From positions 186,001-250,000 of the IMG/VR virus record IMGVR_UViG_3300023174_005338: a stretch of 64,000 nt of DNA; one strand, 5' to 3'. Below, piece by piece: positions 10,326 to 22,264 of this stretch (positions are counted from its first letter, which is position 1; the number at the start of each line of letters is the position of its first letter). A model generated the notes under the pieces. It had not been told where the DNA came from. It ran no database searches and saw nothing but the letters and a program-made list of their open reading frames with translations. Position numbers and translations under genes: made by a program.

Positions 10326-10413
10326 GGGCCGGACGCCGTATTGGTTGCAGGCAGCGGACTCATAATCCGCCTCAGAAATGACACTGTGGGTTCAAATCCC
10401 TCCCGGCCCACCA
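10326..10413 (+). tRNA. tRNA with CAT anticodon and long variable arm (Met/Ile2 by anticodon; charging identity uncertain)
   Basis: Acceptor GGGCCGG/CCGGCCC, A73, encoded CCA; anticodon arm GCGGA-CTCATAA-TCCGC; T arm GTGGG-TTCAAAT-CCCTC; 15 nt variable region. Confidence 0.85.
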
Positions 10414-10814: not shown

Positions 10815-10880
10815 ATGGAAGAATTTCAAAAACGGACATTGATTCTGGTGTTGTTGGCTTTCCATGCCATGACTATGTAG
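10815..10880 (+). CDS. Putative 21 aa micropeptide MEEFQKRTLILVLLAFHAMTM
   Basis: Manual translation; AGGAG RBS 6 nt before ATG. Confidence 0.45.
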   Translation: MEEFQKRTLILVLLAFHAMTM

Positions 10881-10886
10881 AATTGG

Positions 10887-10915
10887 TTGACACATAAATA
10901 GGTGTGTCGTATAAT
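10887..10915 (+). promoter_or_regulatory. sigma70-type promoter for tmRNA, with embedded CATAAATA
   Basis: TTGACA-17 nt-TATAAT; CATAAATA at 10893-10900. Confidence 0.8.
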
Positions 10916-10921
10916 AACGAT

Positions 10922-11177
10922 ATTGTTGTAATTCCTTCCAAGTGAAGGCGCTGTGGACCTGGGTGCAACTCCCAGCATCTCCACCCAAGTGTATTGTCTA
11001 GTATGTTTGGGCGGGGATGAATTAGGATCGACATGGTGAGCTAGTGCGGACGGCAACAGGCAAGGCGAAGGACCTAATCCTAGCAACTCTATTAAATGCA
11101 AACGCATCTAATGACGAGACCTTTGCCTTAGCGGCATGATCTCCGGGGCAACTATGCCTTGTGACCCAAACTAGTTC
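10922..11177 (+). ncRNA. ssrA: tmRNA, circularly permuted (two-piece); tag ANASNDETFALAA
   Basis: T arm CTGGG-TGCAACT-CCCAG and 3' acceptor CATCTCC-A (10959-10983) precede the 5' acceptor GGGGATG (11013-11019); G3.U70; tag frame 11098-11139; outer ends approximate. Confidence 0.9.
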
Positions 11178-11206
11178 AAAAAAAGCGACAGAAATGTCGC
11201 TTTTTT
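11178..11206 (+). terminator. Intrinsic terminator after tmRNA
   Basis: A7-GCGACA-GAAA-TGTCGC-T6. Confidence 0.85.
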
Positions 11207-14626: not shown

Positions 14627-15332
14627 CCTTGTGGTCAATGGTTGCAGTTACATGCAGGCCTATGCCCAGGGCGGCGGGCATCAAGACCTAGCGCAACGCC
14701 TGAATATTCCCGAGTCTCAAAGTTTGGCCATTGGTGGCAGTGCAAATACCAGAATAATGCGTACTGTTCTAAAACACAGTTATCTGGCCAATGAACCTAC
14801 ATTTTATGTCTTGGGAATGACCTTTCTGAGTCGTCTCGAAGTTCCGATTCTCAAAGATTTGTCAGACTTTGAAGGGCGATGGATCAACCCACAGAATCAA
14901 GAATTCAAAGATCGTTGGGAACACCACTGGACTGATCAAGACAGCAAGCTCTTTGTTGAAATCAAACTAAAAACAGAAGTGTACAGCATACTGGATCGAC
15001 TAGAAGATTTACAATATCGAATGTTATCCTTGGTTCGCGATCTTCGCAGTAGAGGACATGGGGTTATCATATATCAACAGGCCGATAATCTTTATCAAGA
15101 ATTTTTGGATAGTTCTAAAATGGCACCGATTGCAACATCCCCAGAAATCGTTCTCGGGTATCGCTGGCGAGCTGTGGCATGGCAGTCAGAAAATGGTGTA
15201 CCACCAATGGATTATGGCACTAACCCTCCACACAATGTACCAGCAGACATGCATCACCCAGCACCAGGACATCATCAAAAACTAAATGAGTTTTTGACTA
15301 ATTACATATCTGATCAAGGCTTGTTAAAATAA
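14613..15332 (+). CDS. SGNH-like hypothetical protein
   Basis: VNGCSYM, AIGGSAN, DMHHPAPGHH. Confidence 0.5.
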   Translation: MAYNNLVVNGCSYMQAYAQGGGHQDLAQRLNIPESQSLAIGGSANTRIMRTVLKHSYLANEPTFYVLGMTFLSRLEVPILKDLSDFEGRWINPQNQEFKDRWEHHWTDQDSKLFVEIKLKTEVYSILDRLEDLQYRMLSLVRDLRSRGHGVIIYQQADNLYQEFLDSSKMAPIATSPEIVLGYRWRAVAWQSENGVPPMDYGTNPPHNVPADMHHPAPGHHQKLNEFLTNYISDQGLLK

Positions 15333-16340
15333 TCAGCGACCGCCGCAACTGTTCACACATCCATATAATCGACCTTCGGCTATGCTATTTTTTGCCCAGG
15401 TCGCCTCTACACTGTTAAACCAAGCAACACAATGTTCAAGATCGTATTCTAATGCATTATTTTCCTTGATCAAGGGCAACAACTGTTGGTTACCTGGATG
15501 TGTCATTTGTCCTGGATAGAATCCCAAAAAGCAACAAGGATAAACTGACCCGTCGGCAGCTATGTATATTTCTTTCAAACGCTTGTGGTGACAAGTCAGT
15601 TGTAAAGGCATGGTATCTTTGTCAGATTTAATTGTGCGGGGATCAAACCACGTGATATGACTCTCCAGGAGATCTTTGACCGGTGGCGGATTTTGCCGCT
15701 CATGATCAGTGTAAGGTTGTCCTAACCAATGACTGAATTCTCCGGTGCGAGCGTACACTGGTCCACGATTGCGTCCTTCATCAATGTTTTCAAATCCAGC
15801 GAATCCCAAGTCCAGAGACAATTTCTTACAGGCCGCTTCCTGATGGCGATTGTGATCAAATGGAATAAATCTCCAGACAGCGTGGCCACCGGCTGCAATA
15901 AAAGCCTGAGCATTTGCAATCACAGTGTGCCAATTGGTGTCTTGTCTGTACACATCGTGCGTGTCAGCCAGACCGTCCAGGGCAAATCCAATCCGCACAC
16001 CAGGCCTGGCCAAGGAAGCCCACCATTCTGGAGTGCGCATGCTGCCGTTGGAGTTGATATACACCGGCACACCCTGATCGCAGAGATAGTGTACAATTTC
16101 ATGAGCATCATGTGCCAGACCAAAATCTCCCAAATTACCATTGAAGCTGATACCTCTACTGAGTTGTTGTAAAAAATCTGGTTTCAATATGTGCTTGATG
16201 TTGTCCAAGGTCAACTCGGTCACAGGATACCCACCATTGTAATCGTATCCGCGATAGTTTCTCATGCACATGGGGCAACGAGCATTACAACGGGTGGTCA
16301 ATTCTATTTGAATCTGACAAATGTCAGCGAGTTCGAGCAT
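15333..16340 (-). CDS. Radical SAM protein with C-terminal SPASM/twitch-like domain
   Basis: CNARCPMC; C-terminal C...[13 protein letters not shown]...CVNSC; start MLELAD at 16340 lies 5 nt after a TATAAATA (16353-16346). Confidence 0.85.
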
Positions 16341-16363
16341 AGAGATATTTATAAAATGGGTGG

Positions 16364-16392
16364 TTGACAAGGTATAAATACCTGTTTATAAT
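16364..16392 (+). promoter_or_regulatory. sigma70-type promoter with embedded TATAAATA, driving the putative attenuator leader
   Basis: TTGACA-17 nt-TATAAT; TATAAATA at 16373-16380. Confidence 0.8.
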
Positions 16393-16398
16393 ACTATT

Positions 16399-16497
16399 AT
16401 GTTGAATCGCACTGTGACCCATCTCGTACCACAGCCCAATTTCAGCGGGAGTGTCGTACTATGGACAATTTGCGAAGAATGGGATTCAGGGTATTGA
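16399..16497 (+). CDS. Putative attenuator leader peptide MLNRTVTHLVPQPNFSGSVVLWTICEEWDSGY
   Basis: ATG at predicted +1; stop codon lies in the antiterminator 5' strand. Confidence 0.6.
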   Translation: MLNRTVTHLVPQPNFSGSVVLWTICEEWDSGY

Positions 16498-16560
16498 ATA
16501 GTATAAAACATCATACGATATTCGAAACCCTGGAACTCGACACTCCGGGGTTTTTTATTT
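16485..16560 (+). terminator. Attenuator: mutually exclusive antiterminator and terminator
   Basis: Terminator AAACCCTGGA/TCCGGGGTTT + T tract (16525-16560); TTCAGGGT (16485-16492) can alternatively pair with ACCCTGGA (16527-16534). Confidence 0.7.
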
Positions 16561-16577
16561 TATAGAGAAAGGATAAC

Positions 16578-16751
16578 ATGTCGATTGATTACACAAAATT
16601 AAACGATCAAATTGTGAAACAGGCTTGGGACTACAACACAGCTTTTTTGAATCAAAAGCAGGTAGAAAAACTGTTTCAGAACAAGATTGATCGTGCGGCC
16701 GCAATGATTCGGGCTCGCGAGCAATTTGAAAAGTTAAACGAGGAAAATTAA
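16578..16751 (+). CDS. 57 aa hypothetical protein (MSIDYTKLNDQ...), first gene after the attenuator
   Basis: Manual translation; RBS AAAGGA. Confidence 0.65.
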   Translation: MSIDYTKLNDQIVKQAWDYNTAFLNQKQVEKLFQNKIDRAAAMIRAREQFEKLNEEN

Positions 16752-16904
16752 TCGCTTGAGTGGTTGCAGGCAACGAGGGCCTGTGTTACACTATAACTAA
16801 CACAAACGGGCGGGCACTAGGATGGAGTTCTTATTGTAGAACAAAAAATCAGTGTATAGTAAAGCACATTGGATGGACTAAGAGAAAGTTTGCCGACGGG
16901 CAAT

Positions 16905-16932
16905 GTAGGTTCAACTCCGTCACCCGCAACCA
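16905..16932 (+). pseudogene. Degenerate tRNA 3' remnant resembling initiator tRNA end
   Basis: GGTTCAACTCCGTCACCCGCAACCA; broken T stem, no matching 5' half at normal distance. Confidence 0.35.
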
Positions 16933-16933
16933 A

Positions 16934-17095
16934 TTATGATCTAGGACGGCAGGTGGCAAAGGCTGTCACAGCAGGGTCACGGAAGTTGAGGCCGTTGCTG
17001 AGTTGTTGACATATGGCAGCAGTGGACACTGGTTGTTCCAGTCGACGGACGAGGTCGCCGTTGAAGTAAACAAATAAGGTTAAAATGTATTCCAT
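16934..17095 (-). CDS. 53 aa hypothetical protein (MEYILTLFVYFNG...C...C)
   Basis: Manual translation; AGGAG RBS; hydrophobic N-terminus and two Cys. Confidence 0.6.
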   Translation of the reverse strand: MEYILTLFVYFNGDLVRRLEQPVSTAAICQQLSNGLNFRDPAVTAFATCRPRS

Positions 17096-17226
17096 GTGTA
17101 TAACTCCTAGTAATATATATCACATTGTATATGTGATTTTTGTAGGGATGCTATACATTTTTGTTATAAGTTTATGTCATGACAAAATATTTTTTTGAAA
17201 AATCATCCTTATAAGTAAATTTATAT

Positions 17227-18219
17227 ATGATACCTAAAAATTTAGACTTTGCCGCTGCACAACAGTTATGGATTTCTAAACTGAATCTTGATCCCAACGA
17301 TCTAAAATCAATCGAAATGCAATTACCGCATCCAAAATATGCTGATTTAATTTTAAACAGTCTGCAGTTTAAATCAACCAGACACGGTGAAAAATACCAA
17401 CTCGATTCGTATGCCAAGATCAAAGATCAGAGCTGGCCTGACTGCCATAGTTATCAGGATTTGTTGAAACTACCACCTCACATAATCGAAGAGTGTAGAC
17501 AGGTGCACGGTTTTGATTTTTCCATCTACGGAGAAGACCATATAGACCAAGAAAGATGGGACAAATTTCAAAATGGTCTTTGGCCTGTGTGGGAATTAGT
17601 GAGATACAAACATGTGATATTGGATCTCAAAAAATATTTCAAAGAAAAAATTGTTTTAGATTTTGCTGCACATGGTGGAATTATAAGTCTAATGGCACTG
17701 AAGATGGGAGCAAAGTTTGTACACTGTACCAATGTTCGAGACGAATATGTGAGTTTGGCTCAAAAAATGCTCGGTCTCTCTGAGTACAAAAAACAGTTTA
17801 AAACTTTTAGAGCAGACATACACGACTATGAGCACAATAAAAAAATTTGCAACGGAATAGATACCGTGTTGTTATACGGCATAATGTACCATGTCCACGA
17901 TCACTGCCAGATACTTGACAGTATAACTGCCGCTGGGCCAGATACCATTATAATTGACACTTTAGTTGATAATTCTATCATCAACAGCGACAAGGCCGTG
18001 GTCACGTGGTCAACAGAGTCTGCGGAAAATGTATGGAATGGATGGTTTGAAAATCAGCAAATTATTACCAATGGGGCACCAAATTTTGCATGGTTTAAAC
18101 TGTATCTATCACAAAAAAATTATCAACCGGTTCATTATGACAAATATTATTCTGCCAGTGTGGACACGTTGTCAGTACCTGATGCACAAAGATCAATAAT
18201 GGTCTTTGAAAGAGTGTAG
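17227..18219 (+). CDS. Class I SAM-dependent methyltransferase domain protein
   Basis: VLDFAAHGG motif I, GIMYHVHD; visibly AT-rich. Confidence 0.7.
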   Translation: MIPKNLDFAAAQQLWISKLNLDPNDLKSIEMQLPHPKYADLILNSLQFKSTRHGEKYQLDSYAKIKDQSWPDCHSYQDLLKLPPHIIEECRQVHGFDFSIYGEDHIDQERWDKFQNGLWPVWELVRYKHVILDLKKYFKEKIVLDFAAHGGIISLMALKMGAKFVHCTNVRDEYVSLAQKMLGLSEYKKQFKTFRADIHDYEHNKKICNGIDTVLLYGIMYHVHDHCQILDSITAAGPDTIIIDTLVDNSIINSDKAVVTWSTESAENVWNGWFENQQIITNGAPNFAWFKLYLSQKNYQPVHYDKYYSASVDTLSVPDAQRSIMVFERV

Positions 18220-18246
18220 TTCCTAATTAAAATTCAAATATTATCT

Positions 18247-18324
18247 GGTGGGGTGGCCGAGGGGTCCAAGGCAAGTGACTGCAAATCTCTACAACCGTTG
18301 GTTCGAATCCAACCCTCACCTCCA
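18247..18324 (+). tRNA. trnC: tRNA-Cys(GCA)
   Basis: Acceptor GGTGGGG/CCTCACC, U73, CCA; loop CTGCAAA; T arm GTTGG-TTCGAAT-CCAAC. Confidence 0.9.
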
Positions 18325-18326
18325 AG

Positions 18327-18403
18327 TCCGGAGTAGTTCCAATTGGCAGAACAGCGGTCTCCAAATCCGCGTGTTGGCGGTTCGAATCCGTCCTCCGGTG
18401 CCA
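18327..18403 (+). tRNA. trnW: tRNA-Trp(CCA)
   Basis: TCCGGAG/CTCCGGT acceptor (U1.U72), G73, CCA; loop CTCCAAA; T arm GGCGG-TTCGAAT-CCGTC. Confidence 0.9.
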
Positions 18404-18431
18404 ATTTATTTAGAAAAGAAAGGAGGCACGT

Positions 18432-19043
18432 ATGCCAGCAGTATTTTTAGTCAGCGACACGCACTTTGGTCACGCAGGTGTATGTCGCTTCACACGTAAC
18501 GATGGTGTGACCAAACTAAGACCATGGGACGATCCAGCGGAAATGGACGAAGCCATGGTAGCAGCCTGGAACGAGCGTGTGCGTCCTAACGACAAGGTCT
18601 ATCACCTGGGCGATGTGGTTATCAACCGCAAGAGTTTACCTATCATGAATAGACTCAACGGTGACAAGGTTCTTATCCGTGGCAATCACGATATCTTCAA
18701 GGACGAGGACTATACACCTTACTTCCGTAGCCTGCGTGGATACCATGTCATGAACGGCATGATCCTTAGCCATATTCCGGTTCATGCAGAGAGTCTGGGT
18801 CGTTTTGGAGTAAACATCCACGGTCACTTGCACGCTAATCGTGTCAAGCGGGCTCGTGGTGTTGATGCCCGCACAGGAGAAGTGTTGTACAGCGATGAGA
18901 TTGATCCACGGTATCACAATGTTAGTGTAGAACAACTTCCAGATTTTGCTCCGATCCTGTTTGAAGATGTGCTCAAACGCATCCGAGAAGAGGGTGGTAC
19001 AATAGGTTTCAAGAACGGCAACGGAACCACACAAGCGACCTAG
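18432..19043 (+). CDS. Calcineurin-like metallophosphoesterase
   Basis: SDTHFGH, LGDV, GNHD, SH, HGHLH motifs; RBS AGGAGG. Confidence 0.88.
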   Translation: MPAVFLVSDTHFGHAGVCRFTRNDGVTKLRPWDDPAEMDEAMVAAWNERVRPNDKVYHLGDVVINRKSLPIMNRLNGDKVLIRGNHDIFKDEDYTPYFRSLRGYHVMNGMILSHIPVHAESLGRFGVNIHGHLHANRVKRARGVDARTGEVLYSDEIDPRYHNVSVEQLPDFAPILFEDVLKRIREEGGTIGFKNGNGTTQAT

Positions 19044-19050
19044 CAGTTCG

Positions 19051-19130
19051 ACCCCGGTGGCGCAATTTTTGGTAGACGCACTCTCCTCAGAAGGGAGCTG
19101 TTGAAGGTTCGAATCCTTCCCGGGGTACCA
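19051..19130 (+). tRNA. trnL: tRNA-Leu(CAG) with short variable loop
   Basis: ACCCCGG/CCGGGGT, A73, CCA; Leu-type 3 bp D stem; loop CTCAGAA; 5 nt variable region. Confidence 0.85.
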
Positions 19131-19159
19131 TTGACATCCGCAGTGTTTTGTAGTATAAT
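19131..19159 (+). promoter_or_regulatory. sigma70-type promoter upstream of omega homologue
   Basis: TTGACA-17 nt-TATAAT. Confidence 0.8.
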
Positions 19160-19180
19160 TGTTGTTTACAAGGAGAAGCC

Positions 19181-19402
19181 ATGAGTGTAAGAATCGAAAG
19201 TCGCAGCAGTGAAATTGATACCGAACGCTGTGTAACCAATGCCGGAGGTCGTTATGATTTGGTTATTGCAGCAGCTCAACGCTTGAGAGAAATGAAACGC
19301 CGTGCCCGAGAAACCAACTCTTGGGTCACGCCCATTGATGCACTCAAAGAAGTACAGAGTGGAACTTTTAACATGACTGATTATTTGATAAAGGTAAAAT
19401 AA
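19181..19402 (+). CDS. rpoZ: RNA polymerase omega subunit homologue
   Basis: GGRYDLVIAAAQRLREM matches the NRFDLVLxAAxRARQ helix; IDALKEVQSG matches xIALREIEEG; RBS AGGAG. Confidence 0.75.
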   Translation: MSVRIESRSSEIDTERCVTNAGGRYDLVIAAAQRLREMKRRARETNSWVTPIDALKEVQSGTFNMTDYLIKVK

Positions 19403-20186: not shown

Positions 20187-21329
20187 ATGTTCACGCTAGA
20201 TCACTGTGATTTAACACCGGACAAATTTGGATATTATTTGGTTGGCAACGCAAAGACCTATAGTAAACTAGAAGCGTTGGAAATACAAAAAGTAACCGGC
20301 GACTTTCCCCAGTGGAATTTCAACAATGAAATTTATCAAATCCAGGACTGGACACAAGAGCCCAGCACCACGCTTTGGGAACTTTACAAACAACGTGCAG
20401 TGCAAATAAGAAATTCATATGACTATGTGGTTTTATTTTACAGCGGGGGCAGTGACAGCCAAAACATGCTCAGCGCCTGGATGGCCAGTGGTTTAAAAAT
20501 TGATGAAATTGCCACTCAATGGAATGTTGCTGGAACTGGAAGCAGATCAACTTTTTGGAATGGAGAAGTAGATCGAGTGGCTTTGCCCTGGATCCAACAA
20601 TTAAAAAATCAAGGCTTGGAATTTAATTTTCGCTTGCTGGATATTAGTGCAGATACTCAAAATGTCATTGAGTTTCATGCACATGATTATGCCTATCATG
20701 CCAATACCGCTCTAAGTCCCAACAACTACGCCAAAAACATGTGGCGACATCAGATTACCGAATACAGACAAATCATAGAGTCTGGAAAAAAACTGTGTTT
20801 TGTATGGGGCAGTGAAAAACCGTTTTTGCTTTGGGATGGTCGACACTACTGTGTGTTCCAAGACATCATTGACAATTGTGTGAATCCCTACACTCAGCGT
20901 CAATATCACCAAGGCTGGTACGATGAACTGTTTTATTGGGCTCCTGAACTGCCACAAATTGTGATAAAACAAGTTCATGTATTAAAAAATTTTTGCCAGA
21001 CTAACTTGGATCCTGCAAACTTTCAGGACACGTTTACAAGACATGGATATAATCCACACATTAAAAAATGGCTACGAGAAGATGTTGTTAAAACTCTACT
21101 GTATCCTTACTGGGATACTTCGACTTATGTGGATGGCAAACCTCCCTCGATGGTGTTAAGTTGGAGAGACAATTGGTTGTTTGTCAGCACACAGGGACAG
21201 CAATATCGTGACTATTTACAAAGTCTTAAACAACAATTAGATTTGACCTGGTTGAATGATGTTGATCACATCAGCAAAGGTTTAAAAAATTGTATCTCAC
21301 CCCATTACTATTTAGAGGAAAAAAAATGA
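20187..21329 (+). CDS. PP-loop (adenine nucleotide alpha-hydrolase-like) protein of unknown function
   Basis: VVLFYSGGSDS; paralogue at 24928-26232. Confidence 0.6.
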   Translation: MFTLDHCDLTPDKFGYYLVGNAKTYSKLEALEIQKVTGDFPQWNFNNEIYQIQDWTQEPSTTLWELYKQRAVQIRNSYDYVVLFYSGGSDSQNMLSAWMASGLKIDEIATQWNVAGTGSRSTFWNGEVDRVALPWIQQLKNQGLEFNFRLLDISADTQNVIEFHAHDYAYHANTALSPNNYAKNMWRHQITEYRQIIESGKKLCFVWGSEKPFLLWDGRHYCVFQDIIDNCVNPYTQRQYHQGWYDELFYWAPELPQIVIKQVHVLKNFCQTNLDPANFQDTFTRHGYNPHIKKWLREDVVKTLLYPYWDTSTYVDGKPPSMVLSWRDNWLFVSTQGQQYRDYLQSLKQQLDLTWLNDVDHISKGLKNCISPHYYLEEKK

Positions 21330-22264
21330 ATATACTACGCGGTTTAATTTTATCATTGATCTTGTTTGCCACCGGTGTGCATGCAGATAAAAAGAATATC
21401 ACAGTGACTCTGCCATTTCCAGCCGGCGGCGCCACAGATCGAGTTTGGCGAGTATTGGATTCCAAGCTCACTGAGCAATTGCAAAGTCACGGTATCAAGC
21501 TACAGACAGAATACAGGGTCGGAGCCGGGGGCGGCATAGCCGGCACACATGTGGCCACTGCACCGGTTGGTGAAACACGTTTGCTGTTCACAAGTGCTAG
21601 TCTAATGATAGCACCCAGCTCAAATGACAATATAAATTATCGACCCAACGATTTTACAATGTTGGGATATTTTGGAAGTTTGCCAATGATGGTAGTAGTT
21701 CCAGCTGCTGGGCCAAAAAACATCAAGGAATTACAACAACTGTGTCGGACTAGGCCTATAATGTATGGGTCAGCTGGTGTTGGATCAACTGTGCATTTGG
21801 TTTCAGAAGAATTTTTAAAGTCTATCAACTGTTCTGCCACCCATGTGCCTTATAAAGGTGCCCCTGCAGCCATGCCTGATCTTGTGTCAGCACGCCTGGA
21901 TTTTGTAGTTGACTGGATTTCCAGCCCGACCATGAGCTTGGTCGAACAGAATCGACTCAATGTTGTTTTGATATTAGGACAAAACAGACTTAAACAATTT
22001 CCTCAGGTGCCAACTGCTGGGCAGGCAGGTTTAAAATTAGAGGCTCTAAATAATTGGCAGGTATTTGTAGCAAACAGCACAGCTGATACCAAGGAAATTG
22101 AAATCATACGTCGAGCCGTGCAACGAGTCATGCGCGATCCAGACAATCTAAAACTATTTACAGATCTAGGACTGGAAGGTGCAGGTAATACAGTTGATGA
22201 AAATTTTTTGTTTGACAACTATCAATATTATCAAAAAATCATTAAAAAATACAACTTAAAGTAA
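21326..22264 (+). CDS. Tripartite tricarboxylate transporter substrate-binding protein (Bug/TctC)
   Basis: Signal peptide, FPAGGATD, GAGGGIA, YGSAGVGSTVHL, HVPYKG. Confidence 0.88.
   Translation: MNILRGLILSLILFATGVHADKKNITVTLPFPAGGATDRVWRVLDSKLTEQLQSHGIKLQTEYRVGAGGGIAGTHVATAPVGETRLLFTSASLMIAPSSNDNINYRPNDFTMLGYFGSLPMMVVVPAAGPKNIKELQQLCRTRPIMYGSAGVGSTVHLVSEEFLKSINCSATHVPYKGAPAAMPDLVSARLDFVVDWISSPTMSLVEQNRLNVVLILGQNRLKQFPQVPTAGQAGLKLEALNNWQVFVANSTADTKEIEIIRRAVQRVMRDPDNLKLFTDLGLEGAGNTVDENFLFDNYQYYQKIIKKYNLK

What the first reader, a model, noticed from the sequence alone, without database searches (positions are those of the whole stretch)
16364..16751. Candidate phage-encoded ribosome-coupled attenuator whose control codons match the phage's own downstream tRNAs
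Seen: a consensus sigma70 promoter puts +1 at about the ATG (16399) of a 32-codon ORF. Its last codons (TTCAGGGT, 16485-16492) can pair with the 5' arm of a strong terminator (16525-16553). The alternative hairpin is extended by GAATA/TATTC and GTAT/ATAC, so terminator and antiterminator exclude each other. Codons 22-28 are TGG ACA ATT TGC GAA GAA TGG. Four of the five downstream tRNAs read exactly these codons: Trp-CCA, Thr-TGT, Cys-GCA, Glu-TTC. Established: this geometry is that of trp/his-type attenuators, where a ribosome at the stop covers strand 2 and a ribosome stalled upstream frees it. Inference: the phage senses depleted or nuclease-cleaved host tRNAs and switches on read-through into the 57 aa gene and possibly the tRNA region. 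Caveats: an antisense ORF and an AT-rich methyltransferase lie between the attenuator and tRNA-Cys, and tRNA-Glu/Thr also follow a separate promoter at 19131.
Basis: partly seen in the sequence, partly recalled or inferred. Interest (0 to 1): 0.85.

Follow-up and report, generated by a model that had tools for sequence, protein, structure and literature searches.

The report
Leader-peptide attenuator guarding phage tRNA genes
A 337-kb freshwater phage and about a hundred relatives put a tiny translated gene, which always contains Trp and Cys codons, and a switchable terminator in front of their own tRNA gene cluster, so slow translation should turn the phage tRNA genes on; this is a classic bacterial attenuator in a use not described before.

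Summary
It also holds across 134 related loci with 97 distinct leader sequences. The module is: near-consensus promoter, then a leaderless 32-53-codon ORF, then a hairpin (P1) holding the stop codon, then an intrinsic terminator, then an RBS and a 57-aa gene (p57). The last 3-5 sense codons pair with the 5' arm of the terminator, and this pairing co-varies with terminator sequence. The ORF stays open, shows a coding substitution pattern, and survives a switch to Shine-Dalgarno-led initiation. In relatives p57 is followed within about 6 nt by a same-strand tRNA array. In two lineages the module sits directly before the array with no p57. The methyltransferase-like gene in this window is a lineage-specific insertion. 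All 97 leaders contain Trp and Cys, the two most enriched residues. tRNA-Trp (44/46) and tRNA-Cys (41/46) are the two commonest isotypes in the arrays. Best reading: a three-strand, ribosome-dependent transcription attenuator that raises phage tRNA expression when leader translation lags, probably at Trp/Cys codons. Nothing was tested experimentally. It matches no Rfam family, and literature searches found no such attenuator described.

The parts
16364..16392 (+). Sigma-70-type promoter, TTGACA-17-TATAAT, with a conserved ATAAATA block in the spacer
   Evidence: 12/12 consensus match. The spacer motif occurs once in the 64-kb window. The promoter is conserved in all related modules.
16399..16497 (+). 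Leaderless leader ORF, 32 codons (MLNRTVTHLVPQPNFSGSVVLWTICEEWDSGY)
   Evidence: The ATG lies 6 nt after the -10. The ORF is open in 97 distinct homologues. pN/pS is 0.31-0.46 and changes are in excess at third codon positions. Six variants carry a 5'UTR with a Shine-Dalgarno sequence instead.
16462..16473 (+). Candidate sensing codons: Trp TGG 16462-16464 and Cys TGC 16471-16473
   Evidence: Trp and Cys are present in 97/97 leaders, against 56% and 38% expected. They are the two most enriched residues. The Cys codon lies 14 nt upstream of the antiterminator strand.
16485..16492 (+). Antiterminator 5' strand (TTCAGGGT), formed by the last sense codons of the leader ORF
   Evidence: It pairs with 16527-16534. 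This pairing is predicted in every variant and co-varies with the terminator arm.
16494..16525 (+). Hairpin P1, whose 5' arm carries the stop codon (TGA 16495-16497, inside the conserved motif TGAATAG)
   Evidence: Its lower helix is 90% paired across 42 sequences. The motif offers stop codons in two frames.
16525..16560 (+). Intrinsic terminator: 10-bp stem, 9-nt loop, T6-A-T4 tail
   Evidence: 95.5% of cells are paired. Four pairs show compensatory changes, a count reached by 0/500 shuffles. The covariance model R1 hits 16468-16556 at 83 bits, and this is its only hit in the window.
16578..16751 (+). p57, a conserved 57-aa two-helix protein of unknown function and the first gene after the attenuator
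   Evidence: Found in 139 loci. AlphaFold pLDDT is 82, with a helix-turn-helix-like hairpin shape and no fold or family match.
16759..16875 (+). Conserved structured non-coding RNA of unknown kind, lying in the read-through transcript
   Evidence: nhmmer finds it in more than 60 loci. RNAalifold shows compensatory changes at 14 of 17 pairs. No Rfam match.
16876..16937 (+). Degenerate remnant of the tRNA-Met that follows p57 in relatives
   Evidence: Alignment A3 shows the T arm, the acceptor 3' half and CCA retained, and the anticodon arm lost. ARAGORN and Rfam do not call it.
17227..18219 (+). AT-rich methyltransferase-like gene, an insertion specific to this phage between p57 and the tRNAs
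   Evidence: The full-length protein is found only on the window's own contig. It shows weak similarity to CmoB and other methyltransferases.
18247..18403 (+). tRNA-Cys(GCA) and tRNA-Trp(CCA), the likely regulated targets
   Evidence: Called by ARAGORN and Rfam. Cys and Trp are the commonest isotypes of the related arrays, 41/46 and 44/46. No + strand terminator-like site lies between 16751 and 18247.

Best explanation
This is a ribosome-dependent (leader-peptide) transcription attenuator at the head of the phage's tRNA operon.

Proposed mechanism. Transcription starts at or next to the AUG of a short ORF. A 70S ribosome loads on the leaderless 5' end and follows the RNA polymerase.

- If the ribosome reaches the stop codon in time, it covers the last codons and the 5' arm of hairpin P1. 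The terminator 5' arm is then free to pair with its 3' arm, and transcription ends after about 155 nt.
- If the ribosome is absent or lags, the last codons pair with the terminator 5' arm as a basal extension of P1. The terminator cannot form. Transcription then continues into p57, a conserved small RNA and the tRNA array.

The lag most probably occurs at the single Trp and Cys codons, which lie at least 13 nt upstream of the antiterminator strand. The circuit would therefore raise phage tRNA synthesis when decoding capacity is short, above all Trp-tRNA and Cys-tRNA, and lower it when supply is adequate. That is negative feedback.

Shown by sequence comparison: the parts, their mutual exclusivity, the translation signature, and the linkage to the tRNA array. 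Inferred: the direction of the switch, the role of the Trp and Cys codons, and the physiological signal.

My confidence is about 0.85 that this is a translation-coupled attenuator of the tRNA operon, and about 0.5 that Trp and Cys decoding is the specific input.
For: 1. Conservation. The module is present in 134 of 139 p57 loci, with 97 distinct leader ORFs of 32-53 codons. The start codon lies 6-11 nt after the -10 in most of them.

2. Translation. pN/pS is 0.31-0.46. In the closest family, differences by codon position are 532/441/932. Six variants have replaced leaderless initiation by a 26-61-nt 5'UTR with a Shine-Dalgarno sequence and keep the ORF. The Cys codon is TGT 62 times and TGC 52 times.

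3. The 3' end of the ORF acts as RNA. The window's ORF is shifted by +1 nt relative to its family. It keeps the nucleotides but changes the last residues, and it stops at the TGA of TGAATAG instead of the TAG.

4. Antiterminator. In folds made before the terminator 3' arm exists, the 5' arm pairs with the ORF end in 44/44 and 97/97 variants. This still holds in 43/44 when the whole 5' part is left free.

5. Covariation of the antiterminator with the terminator arm: GGGT/ACCC, GGGC/GCCC, GGGGTTC/GAACCCC, GGGTCTT/AAGACCC, GGGTCC/GGACCC, CGAGG/CCTCG and GAGGC/GCCTC. On a fixed alignment, 9 pairs show double changes against 4.0 in shuffles (0/500 shuffles reach 9), and 74.5% of cells are paired against at most 51.5% when the partner is slid. 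For the terminator, 95.5% of cells are paired and 0/500 shuffles reach the observed value.

6. No room for another promoter. The T-run lies about 20 nt before the p57 start codon.

7. Target. A same-strand tRNA array starts about 6 nt after p57 in several lineages. In L005 and L006/7 the promoter, a leader with Cys and Trp, the antiterminator and the terminator sit directly before the array without p57.

8. Trp and Cys. Both occur in 97/97 leaders. They are the two most enriched residues, 2.3x for Cys and 1.7x for Trp. Cys changes position when the usual one is lost (L178, L175, L223). The nearest Trp or Cys codon lies 13-16 nt before the antiterminator edge in 48/97 leaders. tRNA-Trp and tRNA-Cys are the two commonest isotypes of 46 distinct arrays. 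Residue enrichment in leaders correlates with tRNA isotype prevalence, Spearman rho 0.57, p 0.008.
Against: There is no experimental evidence. The phage is uncultured and no relative is present among cultured phages.

Each leader has only one or two Trp and Cys codons, not the tandem runs of classic attenuators. The peptide is under moderate purifying selection and has family-level motifs (PQPN, YWS). The residues could therefore matter for the peptide itself.

The 97 leaders are homologous, so universal Trp and Cys are not 97 independent events.

A few arrays lack tRNA-Cys (5/46) or tRNA-Trp (2/46) within the sequence held, yet their leaders keep the codons. Outside Trp and Cys there is no codon/tRNA match.

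The terminator conformer is on average 4.5 kcal/mol more stable than the antiterminator conformer. Read-through therefore depends on kinetics that cannot be computed here.

In this window 1.5 kb separates p57 from tRNA-Cys. This stretch includes an inserted gene and a promoter-like site (10/12) at 18206-18233. Control of tRNA-Cys and tRNA-Trp may therefore be weaker in this phage than in its relatives.

One relative (L153) reads through the terminator in frame.
Confidence: 0.6

Rival explanations
1. A general translation-capacity sensor. The attenuator reports only whether a ribosome loads on the leaderless 5' end and keeps pace with the polymerase. It would respond to global shut-off, loss of initiation capacity, or ribosome-targeting defence. 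Trp and Cys would be conserved for another reason.
For: There is no anti-antiterminator, so any failure of translation gives the antiterminator. The leaderless start is conserved. Leaders have only single Trp and Cys codons, and no other codon/tRNA match exists.
Against: It does not explain why Trp and Cys are the only two universally retained rare residues. It does not explain why Cys relocates when lost. It does not explain why these codons sit just outside the ribosome footprint of the antiterminator strand. It does not explain why the same two isotypes head the prevalence list of the arrays.
Confidence: 0.22
2. A nascent-peptide (arrest-peptide) sensor in the manner of TnaC. The conserved Trp and neighbouring residues would act inside the ribosomal exit tunnel, perhaps with a small molecule, to stall the ribosome and so set read-through.
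For: pN/pS is below 1, and family-level motifs surround the Trp: L-W-x-I-C-E, Y-W-S, I-W-V-W.
Against: The peptide is barely alignable between families. The order and spacing of Trp and Cys vary: W..C, C..W and CW all occur. No match to known arrest peptides was found in any library. A stall near the stop codon would favour termination, not read-through.
Confidence: 0.08
3. The small ORF encodes a peptide that functions in its own right, for example a precursor modified by the neighbouring radical-SAM/SPASM enzyme (15333-16370, minus strand). The terminator would merely set the ratio of peptide transcript to downstream genes.
For: A radical-SAM protein with a weak SPASM hit is transcribed divergently from the same intergenic region. 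Cys and Trp are typical cross-link partners in such peptides (my knowledge).
Against: The radical-SAM gene adjoins the module in only about 10 of 44 distinct versions. Only 14 of the 80 radical-SAM loci kept have p57. The C-terminal residues are not conserved as amino acids, since a frameshift is tolerated. The spacing between Cys and Trp is not fixed. The rival leaves the co-varying antiterminator unexplained. The module travels with the tRNA array.
Confidence: 0.05
4. The terminated transcript of about 155 nt is a phage small RNA, and the ORF is incidental.
For: A strong promoter is followed by a strong terminator. The RNA is structured, z = -2.07. Attenuator-derived sRNAs exist in bacteria, for example rnTrpL (PMC6614838, listed).
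Against: The ORF is kept open in 97 variants of differing sequence and length. It has a coding substitution pattern and, in six variants, a Shine-Dalgarno-led start. p57 and the tRNAs have no other promoter in most loci. A trans-acting role could be added to attenuation but does not replace it.
Confidence: 0.03

Closest known systems
Leader-peptide transcription attenuators of amino-acid biosynthesis operons (trp, his, leu, thr, ilv, pheA) in Proteobacteria
   Same: Both have a promoter-proximal short translated ORF, an intrinsic terminator before the first structural gene, and an antiterminator that shares a strand with the terminator. In both, a ribosome at the stop codon favours termination and a ribosome stalled upstream favours read-through. 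This rests on textbook knowledge.
   Different: Here there are three strands, not four. No 1:2 anti-antiterminator or pause hairpin was found. The leader mRNA is leaderless. Leaders carry single Trp and Cys codons instead of runs. The element is phage-encoded. The regulated genes are tRNAs, a small protein and a small RNA, not biosynthetic enzymes. No Rfam leader model matches: His_leader scores 15.7 bits against a threshold of 49.
E. coli pheST (pheM leader) attenuator
   Same: An attenuator of the translation apparatus itself, read out through cognate codons in a leader peptide (my knowledge, not tested here).
   Different: It controls an aminoacyl-tRNA synthetase, not tRNA genes. It is a bacterial element with a Shine-Dalgarno-led start and a run of Phe codons.
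Mycobacterial polycysteine leaderless short ORFs (Canestrari et al., bioRxiv 10.1101/834739)
   Same: A leaderless sensory short ORF is the first cistron. Ribosome pausing at Cys codons reshapes downstream RNA structure and switches on operon genes.
   Different: Those elements act on translation, by unmasking a ribosome-binding site, not on a terminator. They carry Cys runs and control cysteine metabolism in a bacterial chromosome.
T-box riboswitches
   Same: The functional goal is the same: expression of translation-supply genes is coupled to the state of a specific tRNA through a terminator/antiterminator switch (my knowledge).
   Different: T-boxes bind uncharged tRNA directly and need no ribosome or ORF. 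No T-box model matches here.
pyrBI/pyrE coupling attenuators and the TnaC/tna leader
   Same: The outcome depends on how closely the leader-translating ribosome follows the polymerase (pyrBI), or on a Trp-containing leader peptide (TnaC) (my knowledge; PMC8429421, listed).
   Different: In pyrBI the ribosome prevents terminator folding, which is the opposite sign. The tna leader uses Rho and free tryptophan.

Membership tests
Ribosome-mediated (leader-peptide) transcription attenuator | A short ORF immediately downstream of the promoter that is translated | tested here: met
   The ORF is open in 97 distinct homologues and its start position is conserved. pN/pS is 0.31-0.46 with an excess of third-position changes. 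Six variants are Shine-Dalgarno-led. This is a computational signature only.
Ribosome-mediated (leader-peptide) transcription attenuator | An intrinsic terminator between the leader ORF and the first regulated gene | tested here: met
   A 10-bp G+C-rich stem with a T-run lies about 20 nt before the p57 start. 95.5% of cells are paired, with compensatory changes.
Ribosome-mediated (leader-peptide) transcription attenuator | An antiterminator mutually exclusive with the terminator, with one strand inside the footprint of a ribosome at the leader stop codon | tested here: met
   The last 3-5 sense codons pair with the terminator 5' arm in 97/97 variants. Covariation and a swap control support the pairing.
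Ribosome-mediated (leader-peptide) transcription attenuator | Regulatory codons for the sensed amino acid or tRNA, placed so that a stalled ribosome leaves the antiterminator strand free | tested here: inconclusive
   Trp and Cys codons occur in 97/97 leaders, and the commonest distance to the antiterminator strand is 13-16 nt. They are single codons, not runs, and the peptide is also under selection.
Ribosome-mediated (leader-peptide) transcription attenuator | A strand-1 anti-antiterminator or pause hairpin, so that an untranslated leader terminates (trp/his type) | tested here: not met
   With the whole 5' part free, the antiterminator still forms in 43/44 variants. No conserved upstream partner was found.
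Ribosome-mediated (leader-peptide) transcription attenuator | Read-through responds to translation of the leader in vivo or in vitro | not testable with these tools
   This needs reporter assays, in vitro coupled transcription-translation, or Term-seq and Ribo-seq.
Rfam leader families (Trp, His, Leu, Thr leaders) and T-box | A score at or above the family's gathering threshold | tested here: not met
   No hit at gathering thresholds. The best leader hit is His_leader at 15.7 bits against 49, E = 9.3.
RiPP precursor plus radical-SAM/SPASM maturase pair | Conserved adjacency of the precursor gene and the maturase gene | tested here: not met
   They are adjacent in about 10 of 44 distinct module versions. 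Only 14 of the 80 radical-SAM loci kept carry p57.
RiPP precursor plus radical-SAM/SPASM maturase pair | A conserved core peptide with fixed cross-link residues | tested here: not met
   The C-terminus tolerates a frameshift. The order and spacing of Cys and Trp vary between families.

The most novel reading that the evidence does not exclude
The leader is a dedicated gauge of the two scarcest decoders, tRNA-Trp and tRNA-Cys, and closes a negative-feedback loop on the phage's own tRNA array. When host plus phage supply of these tRNAs falls, through host shut-off, dilution or tRNA-cleaving defence nucleases, ribosomes pause at the single UGG and UGY codons. The antiterminator then forms and the array, with p57 and a new structured RNA, is transcribed. 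When supply recovers, the array is attenuated. This would be the first case of tRNA-gene homeostasis by leader-peptide attenuation and the first such attenuator described in a virus.
Probability: 0.45. Interest if true: 0.88.

Novelty: new variant of a known kind. Interest (0 to 1): 0.78.

Why it matters
Phage tRNA genes have been debated for 50 years. They have been explained as codon compensation, as a replacement for a decaying host pool, or as decoys against tRNA-cleaving defences (PMC10264068, PMC11464382, PMC11555353). How phages decide when to express them has hardly been addressed in that work.

A conserved attenuator in front of the array says that expression is conditional, and that the condition is read by a translating ribosome. 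This gives a directly testable model of what the tRNAs are for. If Trp-tRNA or Cys-tRNA limitation induces the array, the tRNAs serve supply or defence evasion on demand.

The element also extends leader-peptide attenuation in three directions: to viruses, to leaderless mRNAs in a probable proteobacterial host, and to tRNA genes as targets. It provides a compact, portable sensor of translation speed. Finally, it brings to light two unstudied conserved parts of the same operon, p57 and a 115-nt structured RNA.

Tried and rejected
- Rfam, at gathering thresholds over the whole window and at E <= 10 over 16300-17300: nothing for the leader.
- Cultured-phage database, DNA search of 15300-19200 and protein search with p57: only tRNA hits or none.
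- Genome collection: one 1.6-kb contig, in a bin labelled Bacteroidetes. It gives no reliable host assignment.
- p57 function: Pfam, PHROGs, NCBIfam, ESM Atlas, PDB sequence search and Foldseek were all uninformative.
- Search for a trp-like strand 1: none found.
- Lineage-specific co-variation of leader codons with array content: no signal beyond Trp and Cys, and the test has little power because both are nearly universal.
- My mononucleotide shuffle control for antiterminator pairing was weak, because G-rich ORF ends still pair with CCC. I replaced it with the swap control and column-wise covariation counts.
- RiPP-precursor reading: rejected because adjacency and core-peptide conservation both fail.
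- In the window's minimum-free-energy fold, GGGAGTGT (16447-16454) also pairs with ACACTCC in the terminator loop and 3' arm. I did not test its conservation.
- Four literature searches returned no paper that describes an attenuator before phage tRNA genes. The library is incomplete, so this is not proof of absence.
Full report
WHAT IS IN THE WINDOW

The window comes from IMGVR_UViG_3300023174_005338, a 337,119-bp viral contig from a freshwater metagenome.

- A 12/12 sigma-70 consensus promoter lies at 16364-16392.
- An ATG lies 6 nt after the -10 hexamer and opens a 32-codon ORF, 16399-16497.
- The codons TGG ACA ATT TGC GAA GAA TGG occupy 16462-16482.
- The terminator has AAACCCTGGA (16525-16534) paired with TCCGGGGTTT (16544-16553), a 9-nt loop and a T6-A-T4 tail.
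- A 57-aa gene, 16578-16751, has an AAGGA ribosome-binding site.

TTCAGGGT (16485-16492) can pair with the terminator's 5' arm. This helix stacks on a hairpin, here called P1 (16494-16525), whose 5' arm contains the stop codon. In this phage the extended structure is the minimum-free-energy fold of the whole leader, at -44.5 kcal/mol and z = -2.07.

Downstream on the same strand lie tRNA-Cys, tRNA-Trp, tRNA-Glu and tRNA-Thr. A fifth tRNA at 19051-19127 is called by Rfam only, and I read its anticodon as Leu-CAG. No Rfam family matches the leader.

THE MODULE IS CONSERVED

I searched viral and metagenome contigs with the neighbouring radical-SAM protein and with an alignment of the 57-aa protein (p57). 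This gave 139 loci with p57.

In 134 of them the same module precedes p57: a near-consensus promoter, a short ORF, P1 with the stop codon, the terminator, about 20 nt containing the ribosome-binding site, then p57. There are 97 distinct leader ORFs of 32-53 codons. They fall into at least seven peptide families that barely align with each other.

The T-run lies about 20 nt before the p57 start. That leaves no room for a separate promoter, so p57 can be expressed only by read-through.

The exceptions are informative:
- One lineage (L005 = L095) has the promoter directly before p57.
- One (L189) has an HNH-like gene in place of the leader.
- One (L153) has a frameshift that carries the ORF through the terminator.

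THE ORF IS TRANSLATED, BY COMPARATIVE CRITERIA

The start codon sits 6-11 nt after the -10 in most variants, so the mRNA is leaderless or nearly so. Six variants instead have a 26-61-nt 5'UTR with a Shine-Dalgarno sequence and keep the ORF.

Upstream of the structured 3' end, pN/pS is 0.44, 0.46 and 0.31 in three families. In the largest family, differences by codon position are 532/441/932. The Cys codon is TGT 62 times and TGC 52 times.

At the 3' end, by contrast, the nucleotides are conserved rather than the amino acids. The window's ORF carries one extra nucleotide relative to its family. This changes the last five residues, keeps the pairing strand, and ends at the TGA of the conserved TGAATAG, whereas relatives end at its TAG.

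THE SWITCH

If each leader is folded up to the point where the terminator's 3' arm has not yet been made, the 5' arm pairs with the last 3-5 sense codons. This holds in 44/44 versions and then in 97/97. It still holds in 43/44 when the entire 5' part is left free. There is therefore no trp-like strand 1.

After full synthesis, the conformer with P1 plus the terminator is on average 4.5 kcal/mol more stable than the antiterminator conformer, with a range of -2.1 to +16.7. The decision must therefore be kinetic.

The pairing co-varies. The nucleotides flanking the GGG/CCC core change together: GGGT/ACCC, GGGC/GCCC, GGGGTTC/GAACCCC, GGGTCTT/AAGACCC and GGGTCC/GGACCC. Lineages with different terminators (CCTCG, GCCTC) have matching ORF ends (CGAGG, GAGGC), and in those lineages the terminator 3' arm changes too.

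Counts on a fixed MAFFT alignment of 42 sequences:
- Terminator: 95.5% of cells paired, four pairs with compensatory changes, reached by 0/500 shuffles.
- Antiterminator plus P1: 74.5% paired against at most 51.5% when the partner is slid. Nine pairs have double changes against 4.0 in shuffles, reached by 0/500. This understates the pairing, because the register shifts between families.

A ribosome at the stop codon would cover both the antiterminator strand and the 5' arm of P1. The logic is therefore that completed translation gives termination and absent or delayed translation gives read-through.

WHAT IS CONTROLLED

In relatives, p57 is followed on the same strand by a tRNA array. In several lineages the first tRNA begins about 6 nt after the p57 stop codon.

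A covariance model of P1 plus the terminator finds a single copy in the window, 16468-16556 at 83 bits. It finds two further lineages, L005 and L006/7. There the same promoter type, a leader ORF containing Cys and Trp, the antiterminator and the terminator lie directly before the tRNA array with no p57 in between. In L005, p57 has its own promoter upstream. The attenuator therefore travels with the tRNA array.

In the window, the tRNA-Met that follows p57 in relatives has decayed to a remnant. A methyltransferase-like gene, found full-length only on this contig, has been inserted before tRNA-Cys and tRNA-Trp. No + strand terminator-like site lies between p57 and tRNA-Cys. A 10/12 promoter-like site does lie at 18206-18233.

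TRP AND CYS

All 97 leaders contain at least one Trp and at least one Cys. From the window's proteome, 56% and 38% of peptides of these lengths would do so. They are the two most enriched residues, Cys 2.3-fold and Trp 1.7-fold.

Their order and spacing differ between families: W..C, C..W and CW all occur. When the family-typical Cys is lost, another Cys appears elsewhere, as in L178, L175 and L223. That pattern fits a requirement for the codon more than for a structural residue.

The nearest Trp or Cys codon lies 13-16 nt before the predicted antiterminator edge in 48 of 97 leaders. This is about the distance from an A-site codon to the leading edge of the ribosome (my knowledge).

Among 46 distinct downstream arrays, tRNA-Trp (44) and tRNA-Cys (41) are the two commonest isotypes. 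Residue enrichment in leaders correlates with isotype prevalence, Spearman rho 0.57, p 0.008.

The residue after Trp varies freely within the closest family, so Thr is not conserved. Glu is near its background frequency. Without the Trp and Cys codons, the leader matches the phage's own tRNA set no better than long ORFs of the same locus do.

The caveats are that the leaders are homologous, that the peptide is under moderate constraint, and that the codons are single.

INTERPRETATION AND RIVALS

I conclude with about 0.85 confidence that this is a translation-coupled, three-strand transcription attenuator gating the phage tRNA operon. I put about 0.5 on Trp-tRNA and Cys-tRNA supply being the specific input.

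The rivals are:
- a general translation-capacity sensor;
- a TnaC-like nascent-peptide sensor;
- a peptide that functions by itself, for instance as a substrate of the divergent radical-SAM/SPASM gene;
- a small RNA.

The radical-SAM idea fails on adjacency (about 10 of 44 versions), on the frameshift-tolerant C-terminus, and on the variable Cys-Trp spacing. The small-RNA idea fails on the coding signature.

COMPARISON WITH KNOWN SYSTEMS

The element works like the trp/his class of leader-peptide attenuators. It differs in five ways: it lacks strand 1, it is leaderless, it has single sensing codons, it is viral, and it controls tRNA genes.

The nearest conceptual relatives are these:
- The mycobacterial polycysteine leaderless short ORFs, which unmask a ribosome-binding site rather than a terminator (10.1101/834739).
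- The pheST attenuator, which controls another part of the translation apparatus.
- T-boxes, which reach a similar goal without a ribosome.

Four literature searches found work on why phages carry tRNAs and how tRNAs counter tRNA-cleaving defences. They found nothing on an attenuator before phage tRNA genes. I rate the finding a new variant of a known kind.

LIMITS

All evidence is computational. The host is unknown. The beta-type two-piece tmRNA on the contig and the lake origin of the related contigs suggest a freshwater betaproteobacterium, but that is inference. No cultured relative was found.

Noticed in passing
window 16759-16875 (+): A conserved structured RNA of about 115 nt lies directly after the p57 stop codon and occurs in more than 60 related loci. 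It has four helices, and 14 of 17 predicted pairs show compensatory changes. Invariant single-stranded motifs are AACGAG, AAACGGGCGG, GGATGGA and TATAGTAAAGCA. It has no Rfam match. It is absent where a tRNA-Met follows p57 directly, and it also follows the p57-less attenuator of L005. Its function is unknown.
   Followed up: partly
window 16876-16937 (+): A remnant of the tRNA-Met that follows p57 in relatives. The T arm, the acceptor 3' half and CCA are retained, and the anticodon arm is lost. ARAGORN and Rfam do not call it.
   Followed up: yes
window 10326-10413 and 10873-11206 (+): A phage-encoded tRNA-Met and a permuted (two-piece) beta-type tmRNA with tag ANASNDETFALAA. The pair lies 0.5-4 kb upstream of the attenuator in many relatives, so the synteny is conserved.
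   Followed up: partly
window 19131-19402 (+): A second 12/12 consensus promoter is followed by a 73-aa ORF with weak similarity to RNA polymerase omega/Rpb6 (PF01192 E 1e-4, TIGR00690 E 2e-4, both below their cut-offs). After it come a small ORF, tRNA-Glu, another small ORF and tRNA-Thr.
   Followed up: no
window 17227-18219 (+): An AT-rich 330-aa methyltransferase-like gene with weak hits to the tRNA U34-modifying enzyme CmoB and to other methyltransferases. The full-length protein is found only on this contig, so it looks like an insertion into the tRNA operon.
   Followed up: partly
window 16364-16392 (+): The promoter spacer carries a conserved ATAAATA block (GGTTGACA-N4-ATAAATA-N6-TATAAT). 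The block is kept in the related modules but occurs only once in the 64-kb window. It may be a binding site or an overlapping element.
   Followed up: partly
window 15333-16370 (-): A radical-SAM protein with a weak SPASM hit is transcribed divergently from the attenuator promoter. It is widespread in this phage group (122 relatives), and its nearest named families are cofactor and peptide maturases, all far below their cut-offs.
   Followed up: partly
window 16447-16454 with 16541-16547 (+): In the minimum-free-energy fold of the window's leader, GGGAGTGT (codons 17-19) also pairs with ACACTCC in the terminator loop and 3' arm. This would be a second way to block the terminator. Its conservation was not tested.
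   Followed up: no
L153:2076-2346; L189:3741-4011; L101 (about 1.9 kb upstream of p57): Three variants among relatives. In L153 a frameshift carries the leader ORF through the terminator. In L189 an HNH-endonuclease-like gene replaces the leader. L101 carries a tRNA with a CTA anticodon, which resembles an amber suppressor.
   Followed up: no
window 21290-22264 (+): A TctC (Bug) family periplasmic solute-binding protein encoded in the phage, PF03401 E 1e-32. It may be an auxiliary metabolic gene and a hint at a betaproteobacterial host.
   Followed up: no
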